Positions 11,808 to 62,129 of a DNA stretch of 62,129 nt are shown here, in pieces. The notes under the pieces are model-generated. The model made no database searches and was not told the DNA's origin. It was given only the letters and a program-made list of their open reading frames with translations. The stretch lies in NCBI RefSeq assembly GCF_006345805.1, contig NW_021831827.1, positions 1 to 62,129 of the forward strand. The letters are read 5' to 3'. Made by a program: the position numbers and the translations under genes. Within the stretch, counting starts at the first letter, position 1. Each line of letters opens with the position of its first letter. Source of the DNA: Octopus sinensis. Lineage: Eukaryota.

Positions 11808-12209
11808 AAGGCGGCAAGCTGGCAGAAACGTTAGCGCGCCGGGCGAAATACGTAGCCGTATTTCGTCTGCCGTTACGTTCCGAGTTCAAATTCCGCCGAG
11901 GTCGACTTTGCCTTTCATCCTTTCGGGGTCGATTAAATAAGTACCAGTTACGCACTGGGTTCGATGTAATCGACTTAATTCGTGTGTCTGTCCTTGTTTG
12001 TCCCCTCTATGTTTAGCCCTTGTGGGTAGTAAAGAAATAGGTATTTTGTCTGCCGTTACGTTCTGAGTTCAAATTCCGCCGAGATCGACTTTGCCTTTCA
12101 TCCTTTCGGGGTCGATTAAATAAGTACCAGTTACGCACTGGGGGTCAATATAATCGACTTCATCAGTTTGTCTGTTCTTGTTTGTTTAGCCCCTTGTAGT
12201 AAAGAAGTA
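11808..12209 (+). mobile_element. tRNA-derived SINE, family 1, tandem dimer with 18-bp TSD
   Basis: One full unit (11808-12043) plus a 5'-truncated unit. gatacttacaaagtgtaa occurs at 11790-11807 and 12210-12227. Confidence 0.9.
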
Positions 12210-13190
12210 GATACTTACAAAGTGTAACAAATCGTCTAGAATGGTTTTCACCTAAATTAATTAACCCATAAAGCGCTGGTATTTTCGCTTACATAGTATG
12301 GACTGCTGAGCACATTTTATGAAAATGAGACTACCATGCACACATAAAAAACAAAAAGTAGTTTAAATATCTTCTTAGTATATAATGGTGGCAAGTTTTA
12401 CATCATCTGGAAAGTCATTAGTTGAACTATTAGTCCTCTTGTAATGCAAATATGTGAATGAAAATATGATATAGTTGGAAGCCAACGTGAAAATCGGTAA
12501 ATCCGTTTTGAAATGCACATACACACCGACACATGCAATCTTTCTTTTATCAATATCTATAAATCTCAAATGCGAAAAGTTTGTTTGCCTGGTTTTGGCA
12601 TTGGAACGGGTTAAAGGGCACTAGATCCCGTCGGATTTGCTCCGAAATTTACAGGGACATGTAAAATGAGATGAGGATGTGAGTGGGCTAGGTTAGAAAT
12701 CCCTATCTCAAAAGCTGTGGTTACTACGGCAAAAAAACCCACACTTTGACAAGTTTCTTTTCGTTACTCTCATTCTCTTACCTGCCTGTCTTCCTCCGTC
12801 TCTCTCTCTCATTCCTCCCTTCCCTTGACTTTTTCTCTATAACGACGTGTGATAAATTAACTATCTTTCCCCCGCCGCCTTCGCCAGCGCTCTCACTCTT
12901 TCTCTCACATCCCCTCTCTCTCTCTCTCACATCCTCTCTCTCTCTCTCACTCTCTCTCTACGTCTGTCTGCATTCACAGAGAGAATTATTATCGCCACCA
13001 CCACCACCACCACCACCACCACCACCACCACCACCACACAATCATGAGAACAAATATTTGTTCTCATGATTGTGTGGTGGTGGTGGCGATAATTATTGGG
13101 TTAATTTATGTGCGTGTGTTTTCTATATATAAATATGTATATATAATGTATATATACAAAGTGTATATATCTGTATTTATATATATATAT

Positions 13191-13651: not shown

Positions 13652-14910
13652 AATGAAAGAATGGAGTCGAACGAAGATTTTAACAAAATTCCTTTACTCT
13701 TAACACATGTTTCGAAGACTGCATACTCTTTATTCCGAAGTAATAAAGGGTGCATTATGCCGTCTTCTCATCAGGAAAGACAAGGAACCTCTACCAGCCT
13801 CAAGACGAACAAAAACTTTTTTATGACTGCTTACATGGTGTCCACAGTGATAATGAGCGTTTTTTTATAAATCTGTTATAAGCAATGACGTCAAAATTAG
13901 TTGGAAGGAGGAAGTTCTGAAAATAAGAAGGGGACATAATGTATGCTGTATGTATGGGAATGCGCGGGTATTTGCTCTTGTTAATGAGTTTGATTGTTTA
14001 TGTGTGTGTATGAGTGTGTGTATATAACTGCATTTGTGTCTATGTGTGTGTGTGTGTGTGTAATTGTGTGTGTGTAATTGTGTGTGTGGTGGGGACAATT
14101 GTCAAATATATTTAGTAGTGGGGTGACAAATTTGTGTCTGTGTGTTTGATTGAGCGTATGATAGAGAGAGGGGGAGTGGTAGAGAGGAAGAGATAAACAT
14201 ACGCCAGTGATATTTAGTATTAGTGTTTCATGTAACGGAGTAGACATAAAAGTAATTGTCTATGTCAGTGGTGTAGACGTGAAACTAATTATTAAAACCA
14301 AAGAGGTTATCTATATTATTTATCATTCATATGAGTGGAAAGTGTGTTTTTGCAAATGCTTACATTTATAGGATTTTTCTATTAATGTGTTAACCAAGGG
14401 GAACTTGGCGAAAAGGCTATAGAAGAGTTCGAAATTACAAATGCAACAATATTTCCTGCCCTTATCAAAAGGAAAGGATACAGACAATATGGACCAACCC
14501 AGCTTGAAAGTTATATTGTTGTCCTTAAGACGCCAAACTAATTTACTTAGTCCTGGAAATTCTCTGGGAAAATCGAGAAGTTGTCGCACCAATATAGAAG
14601 ACATCGCTACAGCATACATTCTGTCCCCTTCTTATTTTCAGAACTTCCTCCTTCCAACCAATTTTGACGTCATTGCTTATAACGGATTTATAAAAAAAAC
14701 GCTCATTATCACTGTGGACACCATGTAGGCAGTCATAAAAAAGTTTTTGTTCGTCTTGAGGCTGATAGAGGTTCCTTGTCTTTCCTGATGAGAAGACGGC
14801 ATAATGCACCCTTTATTCCTTCGGAATTAAGAGTATGCAGTCTTCGAAACGTGTTGAGAATAAAGGAATTTTGTTAAAATCTTCGTTCGACTCCATTCTT
14901 TCATTTATTA
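13647..14910. mobile_element. Penelope-like element derivative with inverted pseudo-LTR copies (13647-13950 and 14608-14910) and GIY-YIG remnant (-)
   Basis: The arms are reverse complements. Minus-strand translation gives FYKSVIS...FYIGATTSRF and LSKLVWRLKDNNITFKLGWSIL...CCIC. Confidence 0.8.
14781..14859 (+). ncRNA. Hammerhead ribozyme motif (type I, long stem II) in Penelope pseudo-LTR
   Basis: CTGATGA-GAAGAC...GTCTTC-GAAAC-GT-GTT-GAGA. Stem I is tttc/gaga and the cleavage triplet is GUU. Confidence 0.6.
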
Positions 14911-33603: not shown

Positions 33604-34466
33604 ATACTTACACGCTCACAAACGCACTGAAGCATATATCTACGAAGGTGTATGAATACCAACATATATACGCTTATATACACTGCTACAATAACTCAAG
33701 CTATTGTGATACAATACATACTTAAAACAGGCATGGCTGCGTGGCTCGCCTTGCAATCACGTGGTTTCGAGTTCAATCCCATTGCGCTTGGGCAAGTGTC
33801 TATCAACATCTCCGGACCGGTTAATAGCTTTCTGAGTGAACTTGGCTGGAAGACACTCGTGGAAGCCCGTCTCACACACACACACACACACACACTCAAC
33901 ACGCTCGCACGCGCGCACACACATAATTATATTTGTATATGTTTGTATATATATGGATATTTATATATATATAAATATCCATATATATACAAATTTTATA
34001 TACATATTTATATACATATTTATATATATATAAATATCCATATATATACAAACATATACAAATATAATTATGTGTGTGCGCGCGTGCGAGCGTGTTGAGT
34101 GCGTGTGTGTGTGTACGGGCATGTGTGTGTGTACGGGCATGTGTGTGTGTGTGTGTCTGTGTGTGTGTCTGTGTGTGTGTGTGTGTCTGTGTGTGTGAGA
34201 CGGGCTTCCACGAGTGTCTTCCAGCCAAGTTCACTCAGAAAGCTATTAACCGGTCCGAAGATGTTGATAGACACTTGCCCAGGCGCAATGGGATTGAACT
34301 CGAAACCACGTGATTGCAAGGCGAGCCACGCAGCCATGCCTGTTTTAAGTATGTATTGTATCACAATAGCTTGAGTTATTGTAGCAGTGTATATAAGCGT
34401 ATATATGTTGGTATTCATACACCTTCGTAGATATATGCTTCAGTGCGTTTGTGAACGGGTAAGTAT
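33604..34466. repeat. Long near-perfect inverted duplication (foldback) in the CHS intron between exons g and h
   Basis: 33604 to about 33972 is the reverse complement of about 34018-34466, apart from a few substitutions and a (GT)n expansion in the right arm. Confidence 0.95.
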
Positions 34467-41640: not shown

Positions 41641-42156
41641 AATACTCTTAGCTTAGCTTTTCCATGAGGCTGGCCAGATTGGAGCAATCTCAAGATTAAT
41701 CAGCCGAAATTGCGAGGATGATCCGGTTCTTGACTGAAGATTAAAGGCTTCGAATGACCAGTCCATGTTTTTTGTATCGTCTATCTGGGTGTTTTGCGTT
41801 CTTGTCCATTTGTATTATTTTATATACATATATAGCGGCGTACGTATACTTTGTTCTCGTATATATATATATATATAAATATATATGTGTGTGTGTCTGT
41901 GTGTGTGTGTGTGTGTATGCGCATATGTGTGTGTATCTGTGTGTCTATTTTTGTGCACGCACCTCTTGACAACCAATACTAGCTTGTTTTCGATCCCATA
42001 GACTAGTCGTTAGGCAAAAAACACGCGGATAGAATAAGCAGGAGATTTTTAAAAAAATATGTACTGGTATCAGTTTTTTCAACTAAAACCCTTCGATGTG
42101 ATGGCCCTGCATGGCCACAACACAAAGACTGAAGCAATAAAAGAAGATATATTTAC

Positions 42157-42417
42157 CTGGAGAAACCATAACCGTAAAGAACATCTGAATAATGTACACG
42201 ATGTACATGGCCGTAAAGCGGGCATTGTATCTCACCAGTCGAGGAAGATGCTTTACTACTAGGAATGTATTGGCCAAATCCGATAACATCCAGCGTCGTC
42301 GTTGTTTCAAGAACTCCCCCAATTTATATGGACAGTAAGTCGTGTTCGAGGCGAACGTACAAAATTTTAATTTCCAGCCTCTAATCATCATAAGAGTACA
42401 CATCCATCGATCCTCGC
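42157..42417 (-). CDS. CHS: Chitin synthase exon e (GEDRWMCTLM...EFLKQRRRWMLSDLAN)
   Basis: Acceptor tttttaag and donor CCAG/gtaaat. 261 nt. Contains the EDR catalytic base and the QRRRW signature. Confidence 0.97.
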
Positions 42418-42729
42418 CTTAAAAAGTAAAATGACATAAAGTACAAAAACATGAAAAAGAAAAATAAACAGATTTCGAGAAAACTATTAGCCTTTGTTTG
42501 TCCTGTGTATGGCATGTGATGCAGGACACCTCTCCCTGGCGCCCATTCATCATATATGATACACATTCCCATTTATTTAACCGGCAGAGTAACTTGAGAC
42601 TTATGAGGAGAAACTCAGAACGGATGAAATGAGGGTTTCAGACTGAAAGCCAGAAAATAAGTGAGGAAGTTTAGAACAAACGTATCTAAATGCAAGAGGT
42701 TCACTGATAAGGGACAGTTTGATGGAATG

Positions 42730-56617: not shown

Positions 56618-56789
56618 GACAAGACAGAAACAGACATCCTTATAAACATTAAAATTTATTTAAATCTGAAATTAGACATTCAGATTGTTTATTAATTATT
56701 ATAATGTGAATATCTAAAATTTAGTAGACATGCCCTTTGCATTTTTCAATGCAAGAATCCTATAAGGTATACTACTAATCAGATAACGA

Positions 56790-58050
56790 ATATTCTCTGG
56801 CGGAATTTCTTGCCAAGTGGGGAACAGAGTCAAAGGCTTTCTTGTAGTCTAGCCACATTGAAACTAGGTTCCTTCGATGCCCTCGCACCTTTGACGTCAC
56901 AGTTTTGTTGATTAACAATTGTTCGGCACATCCCCAGGCTCCCTTTTTACCACCTGCTTATTCTGCTGTAATGATGTTATTGCTTTCATAATGGTGTTGG
57001 AGAAGGCGGTTTAAACATGCTGTATATATCTTTTACACTAAGTTCTGGCATGTAACTGGCCGGCAGTTTTTTACTACGTGGGTGGTTTTGCATTTGGGGA
57101 TCAGTTTGTCTCTGCCAAAACTAACTAGTGTCGTATGCTACGGTTCATATTGAGAACTTGCTGATACAGGTTAAGACTAGGTCGGTAGAAGGTTAGCTTC
57201 TTGTACGAATATCCAGCAACCAAGTCTCTTCCAGGTGCTTTTCCATCCTGGAGTTTCTGGATCACAGTTGCAAGGGTATCACCATCAATGCTGTACAATG
57301 TCTTTGGTGTAAAGCAGGAATAATACCTTCTTCGAATTTCTTCCTGCCACAGATCATCTTCACACCAGATTTTCCTCAAGAAGGAGTTTATGGCTTCTAA
57401 TTAAGGAGCTTCGTATTTCTTTATTGACAAGAGGCTAAACATAGAGGGGACAAACAAGGATAGACAAAGAGGTTAAGTCGATTACATCGACCCCAGTGCG
57501 TAACTGGTACTTAATTTATCGACCCCAAAAGGATGAAAGGCAAAGTCGACCTCGGCGGAATTTGAACTCAGAACGTAACGGCAGACGAAATACCGATAAG
57601 CATTTCGCCCGGCGTGCTAACGTTTCTGCCAGCTCGTCGCCTTGTTAAGGAGCTTCTGTGATGTTCTCTTCTCCTCCTCTCATGTCTCTGTATACAGCTG
57701 TCTGGTTCCGGTTAAATTTTTTGCTTATTGTTTTTTCTCTTGGTTATTCTCTTCTGATCCTGCTTGAAGGTGATCAGTTTGCAAGTGAGTGTCCTGTTTT
57801 TGCTGTTTCCAAGCATCATTTCTGTCTCCTTCTTCAATTTTTCTTGGTGAGACGTATAGTGATTTGCTTGTTTGCACGCAGTAAGCCTCTTCACCATCTT
57901 CAAAATCCATGATGGTACTTTCTTTGTTGTTTCGGTTTTGTTCAAACTTTGAATGTCGCTCATGTACTGCTTTGCAATAGTAGACAGGACATATAGACAA
58001 GCGTTAATCTGCTAGAATAAGGGTTCATTTCACTGTTGTAAATATTCCTC
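56790..58050 (-). mobile_element. Dong/R4-type internal fragment interrupted by a SINE
   Basis: RKIWC...IQKLQDGKAPGRDLVAGY.YKKLT on the minus strand. Confidence 0.65.
57413..57644 (-). mobile_element. tRNA-derived SINE, family 1, with 12-bp TSD
   Basis: ttaaggagcttc occurs at 57401-57412 and 57645-57656. The body is the reverse complement of the 11808 copy. Confidence 0.9.
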
Positions 58051-58580
58051 TCCAATTTCGTTAACAGCTTTTACTACCGCATCTGATGTTTTTTTTTTGG
58101 TTTTTTTTTTACTTACTTTCACACAGAATACTCTCTCCACGTGAGAGTATGTCAAATCCAGAAATTTCTCGGAAAATTTCAGATAGGGCACATTTCATAA
58201 ATATATAACTTTGACTACTACTACAACTACTACTACTACTACTACTTATACTACTATTACTACCACTACTGCTGCTGCTACTACTACTACTACAATAATT
58301 ATTGCAGTTGTGCCAGCTATTTACCGTAGTCGTAGTAGGGGAGAGTGGTCAGATACTCTTATCAGTAATGTAGTTTTGTCGACATGCACTATAGAATCTG
58401 TATGCATGCATGTATGTATGTATGTATGTATGTATGCATATATGTATATATGTATGTGTGTGTGTATGCATGTAAGTATGTATGTATGTATGTATGTATG
58501 TATGTATGTATGTATGTATGTATGTATGTATGTATGTATGTGTTCGTGTATGTGTGTGTGTATTAAAAATAGTTATTTAC

Positions 58581-59496
58581 CCTTCTATACTTTTCAGGAG
58601 TCGCTTCATTTCGAATTCTGCTTCTCTATACATGGTTGTACATATAAAAACTTTGCTCACTTTGGATACCCCGGTCAACATTTTACTCATCTTACCATGT
58701 GTGGTATGAATTCCTTCCGGATTGTAATTCAAATGCAAATGATGTTCGAGGAAGATATTGTTGTAAGTAAAACTTAAGAAGTTCGATTCCGAAGGTTTCA
58801 GTATGGAATTTGGTACAGGTGTATGGTTCATGCCCAGCATTAGAAATGGTAACAACCAAAGTAAAATTGCAATTCCTAAACAAAACCACGAAGCAATAGT
58901 TAATCCTGACAGGGCAGACAACTTTACGATATGAAAAACTCCATAGAAATTGTCAACAATGATGATCAAGATTATGATCGGAGTGACAAATATTGTTGGT
59001 AGGTAAATACCACTACGTGTAAGGCATATTCGTGTTGATATGTAAGTGGATGCATGAGATAATAAACCAGCAAAGAGGTGAATCAAGAGTCCATATCTGA
59101 TGGTTTTTGTTGAGTTTATATTACCGAAACCTTGCATTAAACTGTTAAATGATTTTTCGAAGCTGTCCTGCCGATTTAAGTAAGTTATAACAACGGCTAT
59201 GACAAAAAATACTACCAATTTCAAAATAGTATAAATTATACTGGCATTTTTACGACCATCAACGTCGCCATCTCGAGATCGTATTATAAATGTTGCTATT
59301 CCAGGGCACCACGTGAAAGATAAAGCCAATAAGGATGTAGACAAAATGAGAGATTGTGAAATAGTCAAGATTTGGCTAAAACCAGTCACAAATGACGTGG
59401 CCACGACTAATGCTACATAAATTAGTCCGAATACAACAAAAATAAGTTTCTTCATAGATTTAGTGTTTGAATTGGTGTTATCATGGTCCAAATCCA
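58581..59496 (-). CDS. CHS: Chitin synthase exon a: end of N-terminal multi-TM domain and start of catalytic domain (VFICTTMYREAEFEMKRLLKSI)
   Basis: Acceptor ttttttttccag and donor GG/gtaaat. 916 nt, several hydrophobic helices. ICTTMYRE corresponds to CATMWHE of insect CHS. Confidence 0.92.
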
Positions 59497-59732
59497 CTGG
59501 AAAAAAAGAAAGAAAAGAGAGAAATAAGTACAAATGTATTAAGAATTTGGTATTGTTTAATGGTAGGCCATATTATATGTCAACATTTCATACAATTTGG
59601 TAATGAAACTGGCAATATTTACATGTATATCTTAAACAAATTATTAGTTTGTTCAGTAAGTTGAATATAATGCTGGTATGTGAAAAGACCTTTATATTTA
59701 AATATGTATGTTGTGTGTATATACACACACAT

Positions 59733-59771
<39 letters not shown>

Positions 59772-59863
59772 AAATATTATTTGAGACAAAACCACTATTT
59801 TGCAAAACAAACAAGGAAAGACTTAATCAATACATAAAATTTAATAAATAGTCAAAAAAACCG

Positions 59864-59906
59864 CCACTACAATCGTTTCTTGTCTTGATCGACAATCTTC
59901 AGGTGG
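59864..59906 (-). ncRNA. Intact minimal type I hammerhead ribozyme
   Basis: Minus strand reads CCAC-CTGAAGA-TTGTC-gatcaa-GACAA-GAAAC-gatt-GTA-GTGG. All conserved core nucleotides and all three stems are present. Confidence 0.8.
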
Positions 59907-60000
59907 ACTTCCAATAATTCAGTTATATATAAACAATAAGAAAATGGAGAGTATATATATATATAAATATTAATTTATTAACATGTAGTTATTTAAAATA

Positions 60001-60102
60001 CCTACAATTGTTTCAATTTTACTCAATACTATTTACAACGTTATGAATAAAATAAAATAAAATTTACATTTAGAATATTATATGAGTAAAACCTCATCAG
60101 GG
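60001..60102 (-). ncRNA. Type I hammerhead ribozyme, intact core, long stem II, weak stem I
   Basis: Minus strand reads gcc-CTGATGA-ggTTTTACTCA...TGAGTAAAAtt-GAAAC-aatt-GTA-ggt. Confidence 0.7.
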
Positions 60103-60709
60103 CTAATTGACATAAAATAATTACATGTTGTTAAGTCGAGATTTTAAAACAAACTGGATAAACGAAGTTATGTTTATATGTATGTGGGCCTGTTAAATAT
60201 ATTTCATAAGAAAAGAAAAGAAAATACGAATAAAAATAAAAATTAAAATAAATTTTTAAAATATAGCCATTATACTGGGGTCGATGTAATCGACTTAATC
60301 CCCTTGTTTTTCTCCTCTATGTTTAGCCCACTGTGGGCAATAAAGAAGTAAATATTTTTCTGTTTAATTTATATTAATCCAGGGTTTAGTATAATGTGTA
60401 TCACATGATTTGGTTGGGTATTTAATATAAGGAATTCGTTTTTTTACGTCATCAAAGATAGTGCTGTTATTAGACCTCTATCTTGTTTACTGATTAAAAG
60501 ACATATGTTGTCATAACATCCAAAATAATATAATATATTTATTTATCAAATTTTATCGAATAATATTTAATTATAATTTATTTTATTTTATTTAGAGGAA
60601 TGTTTACAAGATAAAACAGAATCTTGATGGTTATTAAGAAGTTCAAATTTCGAAGTCAAGATTTGATAGATTTCGTCTACATGTAAATTTCATCATATTT
60701 TACCAATAT

Positions 60710-62129
60710 TATGTCTCACCAGTGCTTCTGCTGAATGTCAGAGGTCTGGTGAAACCCACTAATATGGGTAAAATTCCTTACCTTAGGGACTTGAGCACAA
60801 GCAACCATGCAATATGCATAGCGCTGACTGAAACGCACCTGTCAAGCAGTATAGCAGATGCAGAAATACACATACCGAAGTATACTGTTTTTCGGTCGGA
60901 CAGGAAGGAAAGAACTCATGGTGGGGTTGCCCTGTACGTCCGTGAAGATGTCACACCCATAGTACTGTTGACACACTCAAACTCAGTCTGTGACACACTG
61001 ATAGTACACATGAAACAACCGAAAATAGTAATATGTGTCACATATCGGCCACCAGACACCCCTAGTCATGAAGGAGTGTTTGAAGATAGCCTCAGAAGAA
61101 TAGAAGAAGTCCTGGACAAACTGGACCAGGGTAACACCATTCTACTGCTGGGAGATTTTAACCTTCCGAAAGTCAAATAGCCAGATGGCCATCTCCTCCC
61201 TGGAATGACATCACTTGAACAGAGACAGACAGAGTCCTTGTTGGCTCTCACACGCAAGTTTTTCATGGAGCAAGCAGTGCTTTGGCCAACAAGAGGTGAG
61301 AATGTCTTGGACCTCTGTTTCACAAGCAACCCGATGCTCATCCACAACATAATGGTAACACCAACAATTCTCTCAGATCACAACTTAGTAGAGGTAATGA
61401 TATATGGTATGAGAGAGTTAGTTGAGACGCAGCCATTAGAAAATACCACAGGCCTATCCAGTCTAAACTTCCATAAGGCAAACTGGAAGAAGATCAACGA
61501 AGAGATCCGAAAACATGACTGGAGTGACTTCATCACCACACAAGACACCAACACACATTTCCAACATTTCATGACAACAATACAGAACATATGCCATAAG
61601 TTTGTCCCGGAGAAAAAAGCCAGCGGGCATAGGAACGTTATTCCCAGAGACAGGAAAATACTTATGAGGCGAAGAGCTAAGCTCTCGAAGCAACTGAATG
61701 CACGGCAGAGAAACAATGAGGGACTCCACCTGAAACTTTTTGAAACGGAAACTGCACTCAAACTTTCCTATGAGAAGGAGAGGGCAGAGAGAGAAGCCAG
61801 GGCCATAGAGAATATTAAAACAAACCCTAAAGCCTTCTTTGAATTTGCGAAAGAAACCACCTCGGTACACTGCAAGATTGGCCCACTCTTTGATAAAAAG
61901 GGCTCTCTAACTGAGGACCCCCAAGGGATAAGTGAAATACTAAAGGAACAGTATAAAAGTGTGTTCACATCCCCTCTGGGGCACATGCAAATCACAAACC
62001 CAGAAGTTTTCTTTGATGCCACAACACTCCAAAACCAAACAACAACCATCGACCACATAGACATAACAGAGAGGGGTGTAATATCTGCCATAGAAGAAAT
62101 GAGAATAAACTCAGCTGCTGGACCAGATG
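60710..62129 (+). mobile_element. CR1/L2-superfamily LINE ORF2 (APE endonuclease and linker), runs off the window
   Basis: LLLNVRGL, LTETHL, RSDR...GGVALYV, YRPP, GDFNLP, LDLCFT, SDHNLV, NPKAFF, SAAGPD. The only lesion is a TAG at 61178-61180. Confidence 0.92.

What the first reader, a model, noticed from the sequence alone, without database searches (positions are those of the whole stretch)
59864..59906. Intact 43-nt hammerhead ribozyme, sense to the chitin synthase pre-mRNA, about 370 nt upstream of an acceptor
Seen: every conserved core nucleotide (CUGAAGA, GAAA, GUA), stem I CCAC/GUGG, stem II UUGUC/GACAA, and a 2-bp stem III with near-palindromic ACGAUUGU. Predicted cleavage is between 59868 and 59867. 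Exon a starts mid-codon, so this position should be intronic. Known: minimal type I hammerheads come from Penelope-like elements and usually cleave efficiently only as dimers; intronic hammerheads exist in other animals. Inference: a possible co-transcriptional cut that competes with splicing or releases the intron, i.e. a retroelement-derived ribozyme control point on a chitin synthase.
Basis: partly seen in the sequence, partly recalled or inferred. Interest (0 to 1): 0.7.

Follow-up and report, generated by a model that had tools for sequence, protein, structure and literature searches.

The report
Retroelement hammerhead motifs in octopus intron
The 43-base hammerhead ribozyme motif is really there, with a second one 135 bases upstream, but both sit on a species-specific mobile-element insert in a chitin synthase intron and nothing suggests they regulate the gene.

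Summary
The motif at 59906..59864 (minus strand) is real. All core nucleotides are present, with a 4-bp stem I, a 5-bp stem II and a 2-bp stem III closed by a near-palindromic tetraloop. It lies on the sense strand, 367 nt upstream of the acceptor of a chitin synthase exon.

It has an 11-bp stem II and the same GAAAC-NAUU-GUAG box. No same-strand pair within 500 nt appeared in 1000 shuffled windows.

Octopus DNA is rich in such motifs: 7 perfect-core motifs in 128 kb, against about 0.07 expected per 62 kb. Four of seven have a (TA)n run within 105 nt downstream (P=4e-4).

The ~390-nt piece carrying both motifs (60168..59776) lies inside a microsatellite. It is absent from the orthologous intron of O. 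vulgaris and does not align in O. sinensis.

The best reading is one or two insertions of hammerhead-bearing elements of the Penelope-like or retrozyme kind, riding neutrally in the intron. Efficient self-cleavage is unlikely: the motifs are minimal, their stems are weak, HHR-1 has U10.1-A11.1, the native context favours a competing fold, and the two copies cannot form a cis dimer. The proposed control point on chitin synthase is unsupported. This is a new member of a known kind and of low interest.

The parts
59864..59906 (-). HHR-1, the reported 43-nt minimal type I hammerhead motif. It reads CCAC / CUGAAGA / UUGUC-GAUCAA-GACAA / GAAA / C-GAUU-G / UA|GUGG. The predicted cut is between 59868 and 59867.
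   Evidence: Sequence read. Descriptor hits. Shuffle expectations.
60000..60103 (-). It reads GCC / CUGAUGA / 11-bp stem II (GGUUUUACUCA...UGAGUAAAAUU, 57-nt loop, G10.1.U11.1) / GAAA / C-AAUU-G / UA|GGU. The predicted cut is between 60003 and 60002. Stem I is only 3 bp.
   Evidence: Found. The shared 13-mer GAAACRATTGTAG was confirmed.
59776..60168 (-). Lineage-specific, AT-rich, non-coding segment of about 390 nt that carries both motifs. It is flanked by a (CATA)n remnant on the 5' side and by (AT)n(AC)n on the 3' side. It is probably one or two retroelement-derived insertions.
   Evidence: Window 60253-60194 aligns to O. vulgaris L002 21600-21656, which there runs straight into the microsatellite. 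The flanking blocks are 87-89% identical. There is no ORF of at least 35 aa between 59851 and 60716.
59952..59970 (.). (TA)9 run between the two motifs. It may mark the junction of two separate insertions.
   Evidence: TRF. Distance analysis.
59723..59771 (.). (AC)13(AT)11 microsatellite, 92 nt downstream of HHR-1 on the minus strand. It is the likely insertion target and is conserved as a microsatellite in O. vulgaris.
   Evidence: TRF, alignment, and (TA)n association statistics.
58583..59496 (-). Large chitin synthase exon. The acceptor AG is at 59498-59497, preceded by a polypyrimidine tract, and the exon starts mid-codon.
   Evidence: tblastn to O. sinensis and O. vulgaris models. The same gene hits Pfam Chitin_synth_2.
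60722..61180 (+). LINE apurinic-type endonuclease fragment in the same intron, antisense to the gene. It is a separate insertion and not part of the hammerhead element.
   Evidence: Pfam Exo_endo_phos, E=3.6e-6. The O. vulgaris alignment stops at 60712.

Best explanation
The reported hammerhead (HHR-1) and a second one 135 nt upstream (HHR-2) are genuine hammerhead-ribozyme motifs. They were brought in by short, non-coding retroelement sequences of the Penelope-like or retrozyme kind. These sequences inserted into a (CATA)n(TA)n microsatellite in an intron of an octopus chitin synthase gene, after this lineage split from O. vulgaris.

In the element's own life cycle such ribozymes process element transcripts. 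They work as dimers of identical copies or with help from the element's protein.

Here they are solitary, mutually incompatible copies riding in a host intron. They most likely cleave poorly or not at all and have no role in chitin synthase expression.

- **Shown:** the motifs, their non-random pairing, the enrichment in octopus DNA, the microsatellite association, and the absence from the orthologous introns.
- **Inferred:** the Penelope-like or retrozyme origin (no RT/endonuclease ORF or close relative was found) and the low activity.
For: - **Motif pair.** Two perfect-core motifs lie on one strand 135 nt apart. No such pair appeared in 1000 shuffles, and two or more hits anywhere appeared in 0.3%. 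Both share the box GAAAC-[G/A]AUU-GUAG, which occurs exactly twice in the window.
- **Structure versus sequence.** None of 65 sequence-only box matches in metagenomes has both helices.
- **Enrichment.** The same descriptor finds 4 motifs in 66 kb of O. sinensis and O. vulgaris DNA against 0.07 expected. More appear with small-loop or one-mismatch settings, including a G5A-dead copy 73% identical to another copy. Two compact 44-46-nt motifs occur in another, unidentified contig (L004; protein 46% identical).
- **Microsatellite association.** Four of seven motifs have (TA)>=5 within 105 nt downstream, against a background of 0.059 (P=3.6e-4). This matches the microsatellite and AT-rich target bias of PLEs (PMC8557442, PMC11167929).
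- **Lineage specificity.** The carrying segment is absent in O. vulgaris and unalignable in O. sinensis, while the flanks are 87-90% identical. An O. vulgaris motif is likewise absent at the orthologous window site.
- **Architecture.** Helix III of 2 bp plus a palindromic tetraloop and a short helix I match published invertebrate and PLE hammerheads (PMC7229834, PMC4209133).
- **Low activity.** Single min-HHRs were inactive in vitro (PMC4209133). A PLE hammerhead was protein-dependent and left no RNA-seq ends (PMC11167929). With flanks, helices I+II have a predicted occupancy of 0.002-0.006 because of a competing hairpin.
Against: - No RT or GIY-YIG ORF lies nearby, and no close relative of the 390-nt segment exists in the 170 kb of cephalopod-like DNA I could reach. 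The element family is therefore not identified.
- HHR-1 lacks two hallmarks of PLE min-HHRs: G10.1-C11.1 and the bulged nucleotide after A9 (PMC4209133).
- The two units share no similarity beyond the boxes, and there is no tandem repeat of about 135 nt. This is not a classic retrozyme array.
- Rfam models do not score either motif.
- Activity was only predicted, not measured. Thermodynamic occupancy ignores tertiary contacts and is equally low for other octopus motifs.
Confidence: 0.75

Rival explanations
1. The sense-strand hammerhead cuts the chitin synthase pre-mRNA co-transcriptionally, competes with splicing, and acts as a domesticated control point on the gene.
For: The core is intact on the sense strand, 367 nt upstream of the acceptor. 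Two sense-strand motifs double the opportunity. Conserved intronic hammerheads exist in amniotes (established knowledge: the HH9 and HH10 families).
Against: - The motif is not present at the orthologous intron in O. vulgaris or O. sinensis.
- It is a minimal motif without loop-loop contacts, has U10.1-A11.1, and has a 2-bp helix III.
- Single min-HHRs are inactive in vitro (PMC4209133).
- A competing fold dominates in context.
- The two copies cannot form a double hammerhead in cis. The cross stem I would be 1 bp in either combination, read directly from the sequence.
- In published ribozyme-insertion experiments, as I recall them (Dye et al. 2006; Fong et al. 2009; not checked with these tools), intron cleavage by slow ribozymes did not prevent splicing.
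Confidence: 0.07
2. The two ribozymes are active enough to release a 135-nt RNA (60002..59868) with 5'-OH and cyclic-phosphate ends. This RNA is then circularised as in retrozymes, so the insert is a live or recently live retrozyme-like unit with no meaningful effect on the host gene.
For: Two same-strand motifs delimit a short unit. Metazoan retrozymes give small circRNAs by this route (PMC7229834). Insertions in both species are younger than the species split.
Against: - The unit of 135 nt is below the published 170-400 nt range.
- The units are dissimilar and there is no tandem array.
- The 135-nt and 391-nt RNAs fold no better than shuffles, with z of +0.56 and +0.85.
- Stems I are weak, at 3-4 bp.
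Confidence: 0.1
3. The 43-nt motif is a chance match to a short, degenerate consensus in AT-rich intron DNA.
For: - Alone it is expected 0.017-0.09 times per 62-kb window, which is hundreds to thousands per genome.
- There is no Rfam hit.
- The fold z-score is -0.7.
- It has the atypical U10.1-A11.1 pair.
- No related copy was found.
Against: - A second motif lies 135 nt away on the same strand and shares a 13-mer.
- The local density of such motifs in octopus DNA is about 50-fold above chance.
- None of 65 box-only matches has both helices.
- The tetraloop is palindromic, and the motif sits in a lineage-specific insert next to (TA)n.
Confidence: 0.04

Closest known systems
Minimal hammerheads (min-HHRs) of Penelope-like elements (Cervera & de la Pena 2014, PMC4209133)
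   Same: - Type I topology with a short helix I of 3-5 bp.
- Helix III of at most 2 bp, with a palindromic loop suited to dimer formation.
- A long helix II in HHR-2 (11 bp).
- Mostly solitary genomic copies and high sequence heterogeneity.
- AT-rich or microsatellite insertion sites.
   Different: - No pLTR-ORF-pLTR context.
- HHR-1 has U10.1-A11.1 and HHR-2 has G.U, instead of the highly conserved G10.1-C11.1.
- There is no bulged nucleotide after A9.
- Several octopus copies have a very large loop 2 of 48-80 nt.
Metazoan non-LTR retrozymes (Cervera & de la Pena 2020, PMC7229834; 2026 preprint 10.64898/2026.07.22.740005)
   Same: A short, non-coding, low-GC element with type I hammerheads on one strand. 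Helix III is 2 bp plus a tetraloop, as in invertebrate retrozymes. About 43% of Xenopus copies are intronic.
   Different: - There is no tandem array of similar 170-400 bp units.
- The two units here are unrelated outside the boxes.
- There are no loop1-loop2 tertiary contacts.
- The RNA is not unusually structured.
Conserved intronic hammerheads of amniotes (Rfam HH9/HH10) and the intronic CPEB3 HDV-like ribozyme
   Same: A self-cleaving-ribozyme motif on the sense strand of an intron of a protein-coding gene.
   Different: Those are conserved at orthologous positions across many species, have full tertiary contacts, and are found by covariance models. This one is lineage-specific, minimal, and invisible to Rfam.
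Amphibian satellite 2 and axolotl hammerheads that act as dimers
   Same: A weak helix III with a palindromic tetraloop. Poor activity as a monomer and good activity as a dimer of identical copies.
   Different: Those sit in long arrays of identical repeats, so a partner is always adjacent. Here the neighbouring copy has an incompatible stem I.

Membership tests
Hammerhead ribozyme (motif level) | Conserved core C3 U4 G5 A6 N7 G8 A9, G12 A13 A14, A15.1-U16.1 and H17 at a three-way junction of helices I, II and III | tested here: met
   Both HHR-1 and HHR-2 pass a strict-core descriptor. The sequence was read.
Hammerhead ribozyme (motif level) | Site-specific self-cleavage giving 5'-OH and 2',3'-cyclic phosphate ends | not testable with these tools
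   This needs in vitro transcription or RNA end mapping. Thermodynamic occupancy of the hammerhead fold in context is low.
Hammerhead ribozyme (Rfam Hammerhead_1/3/II/HH9/HH10) | Covariance-model score at or above the gathering threshold | tested here: not met
   No hit at gathering score or at E<=10. The same holds for all the other octopus motifs, so the models do not cover this architecture.
PLE-associated min-HHR | Helix III of at most 2 bp, with palindromic 15.2-16.2 and loop 3 | tested here: met
   HHR-2 has ACAAUUGU, a perfect 8-nt palindrome. HHR-1 has ACGAUUGU, which is self-complementary with two G.U pairs.
PLE-associated min-HHR | Highly conserved G10.1-C11.1 pair and an extra nucleotide between A9 and 10.1 | tested here: not met
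   HHR-1 has U10.1-A11.1 and HHR-2 has G10.1.U11.1. Neither has a bulge. The criteria are from PMC4209133.
PLE-associated min-HHR | Location in a pseudo-LTR flanking an RT plus GIY-YIG ORF | tested here: not met
   There is no ORF of at least 35 aa on either strand between 59851 and 60716. The only nearby coding remnant is a LINE endonuclease on the other strand. Most published genomic min-HHRs are likewise solitary.
PLE-associated min-HHR | Membership of a multi-copy consensus family in the same genome | tested here: inconclusive
   Hammerhead motifs are abundant in octopus DNA. No close relative of this segment exists in the 170 kb available. The whole genome could not be searched.
PLE-associated min-HHR | Insertion at AT-rich or microsatellite targets | tested here: met
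   The segment sits inside a (CATA)n(TA)n microsatellite. Four of seven motifs are within 105 nt of (TA)n, P=3.6e-4.
Non-LTR retrozyme | Head-to-tail repeats of similar 170-400 bp units, each with one type I hammerhead | tested here: not met
   Unit-versus-unit alignment gives z=1.0-1.5. TRF finds only microsatellites.
Non-LTR retrozyme | The monomer RNA forms a stable, highly paired circle | tested here: not met
   The 135-nt unit has z=+0.56 and the 391-nt segment has z=+0.85 against shuffles. Both were folded as linear RNA.
Domesticated intronic ribozyme (HH9/HH10 or CPEB3 type) | Conservation at the orthologous intron across species | tested here: not met
   The segment is absent in O. vulgaris (L002) and unalignable in O. 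sinensis (L001), while the flanks are 87-90% identical. No sense-strand motif occurs in those introns.

The most novel reading that the evidence does not exclude
Octopus genomes carry a recently active, so far undescribed family of short non-autonomous elements. These elements bear hammerheads with unusually long helix II inserts and integrate at (TA)n microsatellites.

In this species a sense-strand pair in a chitin synthase intron self-cleaves, alone or helped by an element-encoded protein. That cleavage releases a 135-nt RNA and measurably lowers or times chitin synthase mRNA, which would be a lineage-specific ribozyme brake on a biomineralisation gene.
Probability: 0.06. Interest if true: 0.6.

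Novelty: new member of a known kind. Interest (0 to 1): 0.22.

Why it matters
As it stands, this is a routine example of a well-described class: retroelement-borne minimal hammerheads scattered through invertebrate genomes, many of them in introns.

Its modest value is descriptive, in four ways:
- Octopus DNA appears to carry roughly one hammerhead motif per 20-25 kb.
- These motifs are tied to (TA)n microsatellites.
- The insertions are younger than the split between Octopus species.
- The current Rfam models miss all of them.

Only if cleavage were shown in vivo would it bear on the open question of whether such ribozymes ever affect host genes.

Tried and rejected
1. **Rfam scans** of the window, of 351 nt and of 71 nt around the site gave no hammerhead hit. 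I rejected this as evidence against the motif, because Rfam also misses the canonical-looking motif at 14781-14859 and all motifs in L001 and L002. The mir-297 and mir-466 hits at 59700-59758 are microsatellite artefacts.
2. **Whole-window repeat search** returned only microsatellite families. It found no copy of the hammerhead flank.
3. **A tandem-duplicate origin for the two units** was tested by alignment against shuffles and was not significant. TRF finds no long-period repeat.
4. **A double hammerhead formed in cis** by HHR-2 and HHR-1. Helix III would pair over 8 bp, but the cross-formed stems I would be 1 bp each, so I rejected it (read from the sequence).
5. **A stable circRNA-like fold** of the 135-nt or 391-nt RNA is not supported.
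6. **A metagenome scan** for CTGAAGA-N(12-22)-GAAACRATTGTAG returned 65 matches. All lacked the helices, so the scan found no relatives and served only as a control.
7. **Sampling more octopus DNA through a LINE RT protein** yielded only one extra O. vulgaris locus of 21 kb with no motif. A second look-up (with P0003, from the first search) added one 21-kb contig of unknown origin with two compact motifs. That is too little to find relatives of this element.
8. **A search for a Penelope RT/GIY-YIG ORF** near any motif found none.

Full report
**1. Observation**

On the minus strand, 59906..59864 reads CCAC CUGAAGA UUGUC GAUCAA GACAA GAAA C GAUU G UA GUGG.
- Every invariant hammerhead position is present: C3 U4 G5 A6 (N7=A) G8 A9, G12 A13 A14, A15.1-U16.1 and H17=A.
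- Stem I is 4 bp, stem II is 5 bp with a 6-nt loop, and stem III is 2 bp closed by GAUU.
- ACGAUUGU is self-complementary with two G.U pairs, so two identical copies could form an 8-bp helix III.

My descriptor finds this as its only hit in the window. Block-wise dinucleotide shuffles give 0.09 hits per window with a loose descriptor, 0.017 with a medium one, and 0 of 600 with a tight one. Alone, the motif is unlikely in one window but expected hundreds to thousands of times in a 2-3 Gb genome. Its isolated fold is unremarkable (z=-0.7). Rfam gives no hammerhead hit even at E<=10 on 71 nt.

**2. Gene context**

- The ORF 58577-59533(-) is 88% identical to an O. sinensis protein and 85% identical to an O. 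vulgaris protein. The window therefore comes from an Octopus species.
- The acceptor is ...ttctttttttccag|TGG, and the exon starts at 59496 mid-codon.
- The O. sinensis model has three upstream exons. The nearest lies about 2.9 kb upstream of the large exon, and these exons are also detectable in O. vulgaris.
- In the window, the upstream exon therefore lies just beyond 62129, and the motif is intronic, on the sense strand, 367 nt from the acceptor.
- A downstream exon with QRRRW (42086-42418, minus strand) reaches the Pfam Chitin_synth_2 threshold.

**3. A second hammerhead**

While mapping homology I noticed CUGAUGAG at about 60100 and GAAACAAUUGUAGG at about 60010. With loop II allowed up to 90 nt, the descriptor returns a second motif at 60103..60000 on the same strand.
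- It reads GCC CUGAUGA, then an 11-bp stem II (GGUUUUACUCA/UGAGUAAAAUU, 57-nt loop), then GAAA C AAUU G UA GGU. The predicted cut is between 60003 and 60002.
- ACAAUUGU is a perfect palindrome. HHR-1's ACGAUUGU differs from it by one transition.
- GAAACRATTGTAG occurs exactly twice in the window, at these two sites.
- Across 1000 shuffled windows the extended descriptor gave 0.069 hits per window. Two or more hits occurred in 0.3%, and a same-strand pair within 500 nt never occurred.
- As an empirical control, 65 metagenome sequences match both boxes, and none has both helices.

The pair is therefore not a chance match.

**4. Octopus DNA is full of such motifs**

The same descriptor finds 4 motifs in the 66 kb of O. 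sinensis and O. vulgaris DNA I fetched, against 0.07 expected. A variant descriptor adds three more findings:
- a motif at window 14781-14859(+), which has a 97%-identical inverted twin near 13700-13778;
- a G5A-dead copy in O. vulgaris, 73% identical to an O. sinensis copy;
- two compact 44-46-nt motifs in another contig of unknown origin (L004), whose chitin-synthase-like protein is 46% identical.

The recurring signature is CUGA[A/U]GA, a 5-11-bp stem II that often has a 48-80-nt loop, GAAAC, a palindromic tetraloop (GCGC, ACGU, AAUU) and GUA. Rfam detects none of them, so its silence on the candidate is uninformative.

Four of seven motifs have (TA)>=5 within 105 nt downstream, against a background probability of 0.059 (P=3.6e-4).

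**5. No conservation**

- Window 60712-60350 and 59771-58288 align to O. vulgaris at 89% and 87%. The piece between them does not align.
- A sensitive local alignment shows that window 60253-60194 matches O. vulgaris sequence that runs directly into the (CATA)n(TA)n microsatellite.
- Window 60168..59776, which holds both motifs, is therefore extra sequence inside that microsatellite.
- In O. sinensis, homology stops at 59704, and a different sequence lies upstream.
- Conversely, the O. vulgaris motif at L002 34719-34811 lies in a segment absent from the orthologous window position.
- A (TA)9 run at 59952-59970 separates the two window motifs, which suggests two successive insertions.
- No sense-strand motif occurs in the corresponding introns of the other two species.

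**6. What it is**

The published features of PLE min-HHRs and invertebrate type I hammerheads are (PMC4209133, PMC7229834):
- a short helix I;
- helix III of at most 2 bp with a palindromic loop;
- mostly solitary copies;
- extreme heterogeneity.

PLEs also show a microsatellite or AT-rich insertion bias (PMC8557442, PMC11167929). A 2026 preprint argues that animal retrozymes are non-autonomous PLE derivatives (10.64898/2026.07.22.740005).

The window segment fits this kind, but some criteria are not met:
- no RT or GIY-YIG ORF lies nearby;
- there is no G10.1-C11.1 pair and no bulged nucleotide after A9;
- the two units are unrelated outside the boxes;
- there is no tandem array;
- the RNA is not unusually structured.

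I therefore file it as a retroelement-derived hammerhead of the PLE or retrozyme kind, not as a proven member of a named element family.

**7. How it likely works, or does not**

In the element's own cycle these ribozymes process element transcripts as dimers or with help from the element's protein. Several lines argue against efficient cleavage here:
- Single min-HHRs showed no detectable cleavage (PMC4209133).
- An anole PLE hammerhead cleaved only with its protein and left no RNA-seq ends (PMC11167929).
- A double hammerhead between HHR-2 and HHR-1 would have a good helix III, but the cross-formed stems I would be 1 bp each.
- With native flanks, helices I+II of HHR-1 have a predicted occupancy of 0.002-0.006, because GAAGAUUGUCG pairs with UGGCGGUUUUU. 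This measure is just as low for most of the other octopus motifs tested (one reaches 0.1-0.2), and it ignores tertiary contacts.

Efficient co-transcriptional cleavage is therefore unlikely. From memory, and not checked here, published ribozyme-insertion experiments found that slow intronic cleavage does not block splicing.

**8. Verdict**

- The retroelement attribution is supported.
- This is a new member of a known kind.
- Interest is low, with a small residual chance of lineage-specific activity.

Noticed in passing
window 14781-14859 (+) and about 13700-13778 (-); inverted repeat arms 13705-13866 and 14693-14854: Another hammerhead motif reads UUUC CUGAUGA GAAGAC...GUCUUC GAAAC GU GUU GAGA, with G10.1-C11.1. 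It has a 97%-identical inverted twin 826 nt away across a TG microsatellite. This resembles the inverted dual min-HHRs and inverted truncated copies described for Penelope-like elements. The twin has a 2-nt change in helix III. Rfam does not detect it.
   Followed up: partly
L001 22719-22839 (-), L002 3614-3718 (-), L002 34719-34811 (-), L002 3073-3132 (-), L002 35127-35195 (-): More hammerhead motifs lie in the O. sinensis and O. vulgaris chitin synthase loci, all antisense to the gene. The L002 3614-3718 copy has a G5A core mutation, which kills catalysis, and is 73% identical to the L001 copy. The L002 34719-34811 copy shares CACCCUUUAU in loop 2 with the window motif at 14781.
   Followed up: partly
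L004 5784-5827 (-) and 364-409 (+): Two compact 44-46-nt hammerhead motifs lie in a 21-kb contig of unknown origin whose chitin-synthase-like protein is 46% identical. One has G10.1-C11.1 and GUC. The other has the bulged U after A9 and an 8-nt palindromic loop 3, which are typical PLE min-HHR features.
   Followed up: no
window 60722-61180 (+), probably extending to about 62129: A LINE apurinic-type endonuclease fragment (Pfam Exo_endo_phos) lies in the same intron, antisense to the gene. It is absent from the aligned O. vulgaris sequence.
   Followed up: partly
window 60274-60362, with copies at 11954-12052, 12141-12216, 57414-57497 and in L002 (984-1075, 1334-1419, 23684-23778): A short interspersed repeat of about 90 nt, at 74-78% identity, is shared by the window and O. 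vulgaris. It sits just upstream of the hammerhead-bearing segment.
   Followed up: no
window 33604-33898 and 34172-34466: A 295-nt inverted repeat, 98% complementary, with a 273-nt spacer. It could be a foldback or MITE-like element.
   Followed up: no
window 56714-57379 (-), and 11808-12018 with 57433-57643: Reverse-transcriptase-like ORF fragments (motif LDYKKAFDSVPH) lie next to a 211-nt repeat. That repeat is 91% complementary to a copy 45 kb away. These are probably decayed non-LTR retrotransposon pieces.
   Followed up: no
window 59700-59775: The Rfam E-value hits to mir-297, mir-466 and mir-1277 are artefacts of the (AC)n(AT)n microsatellite. All are far below the gathering scores.
   Followed up: yes
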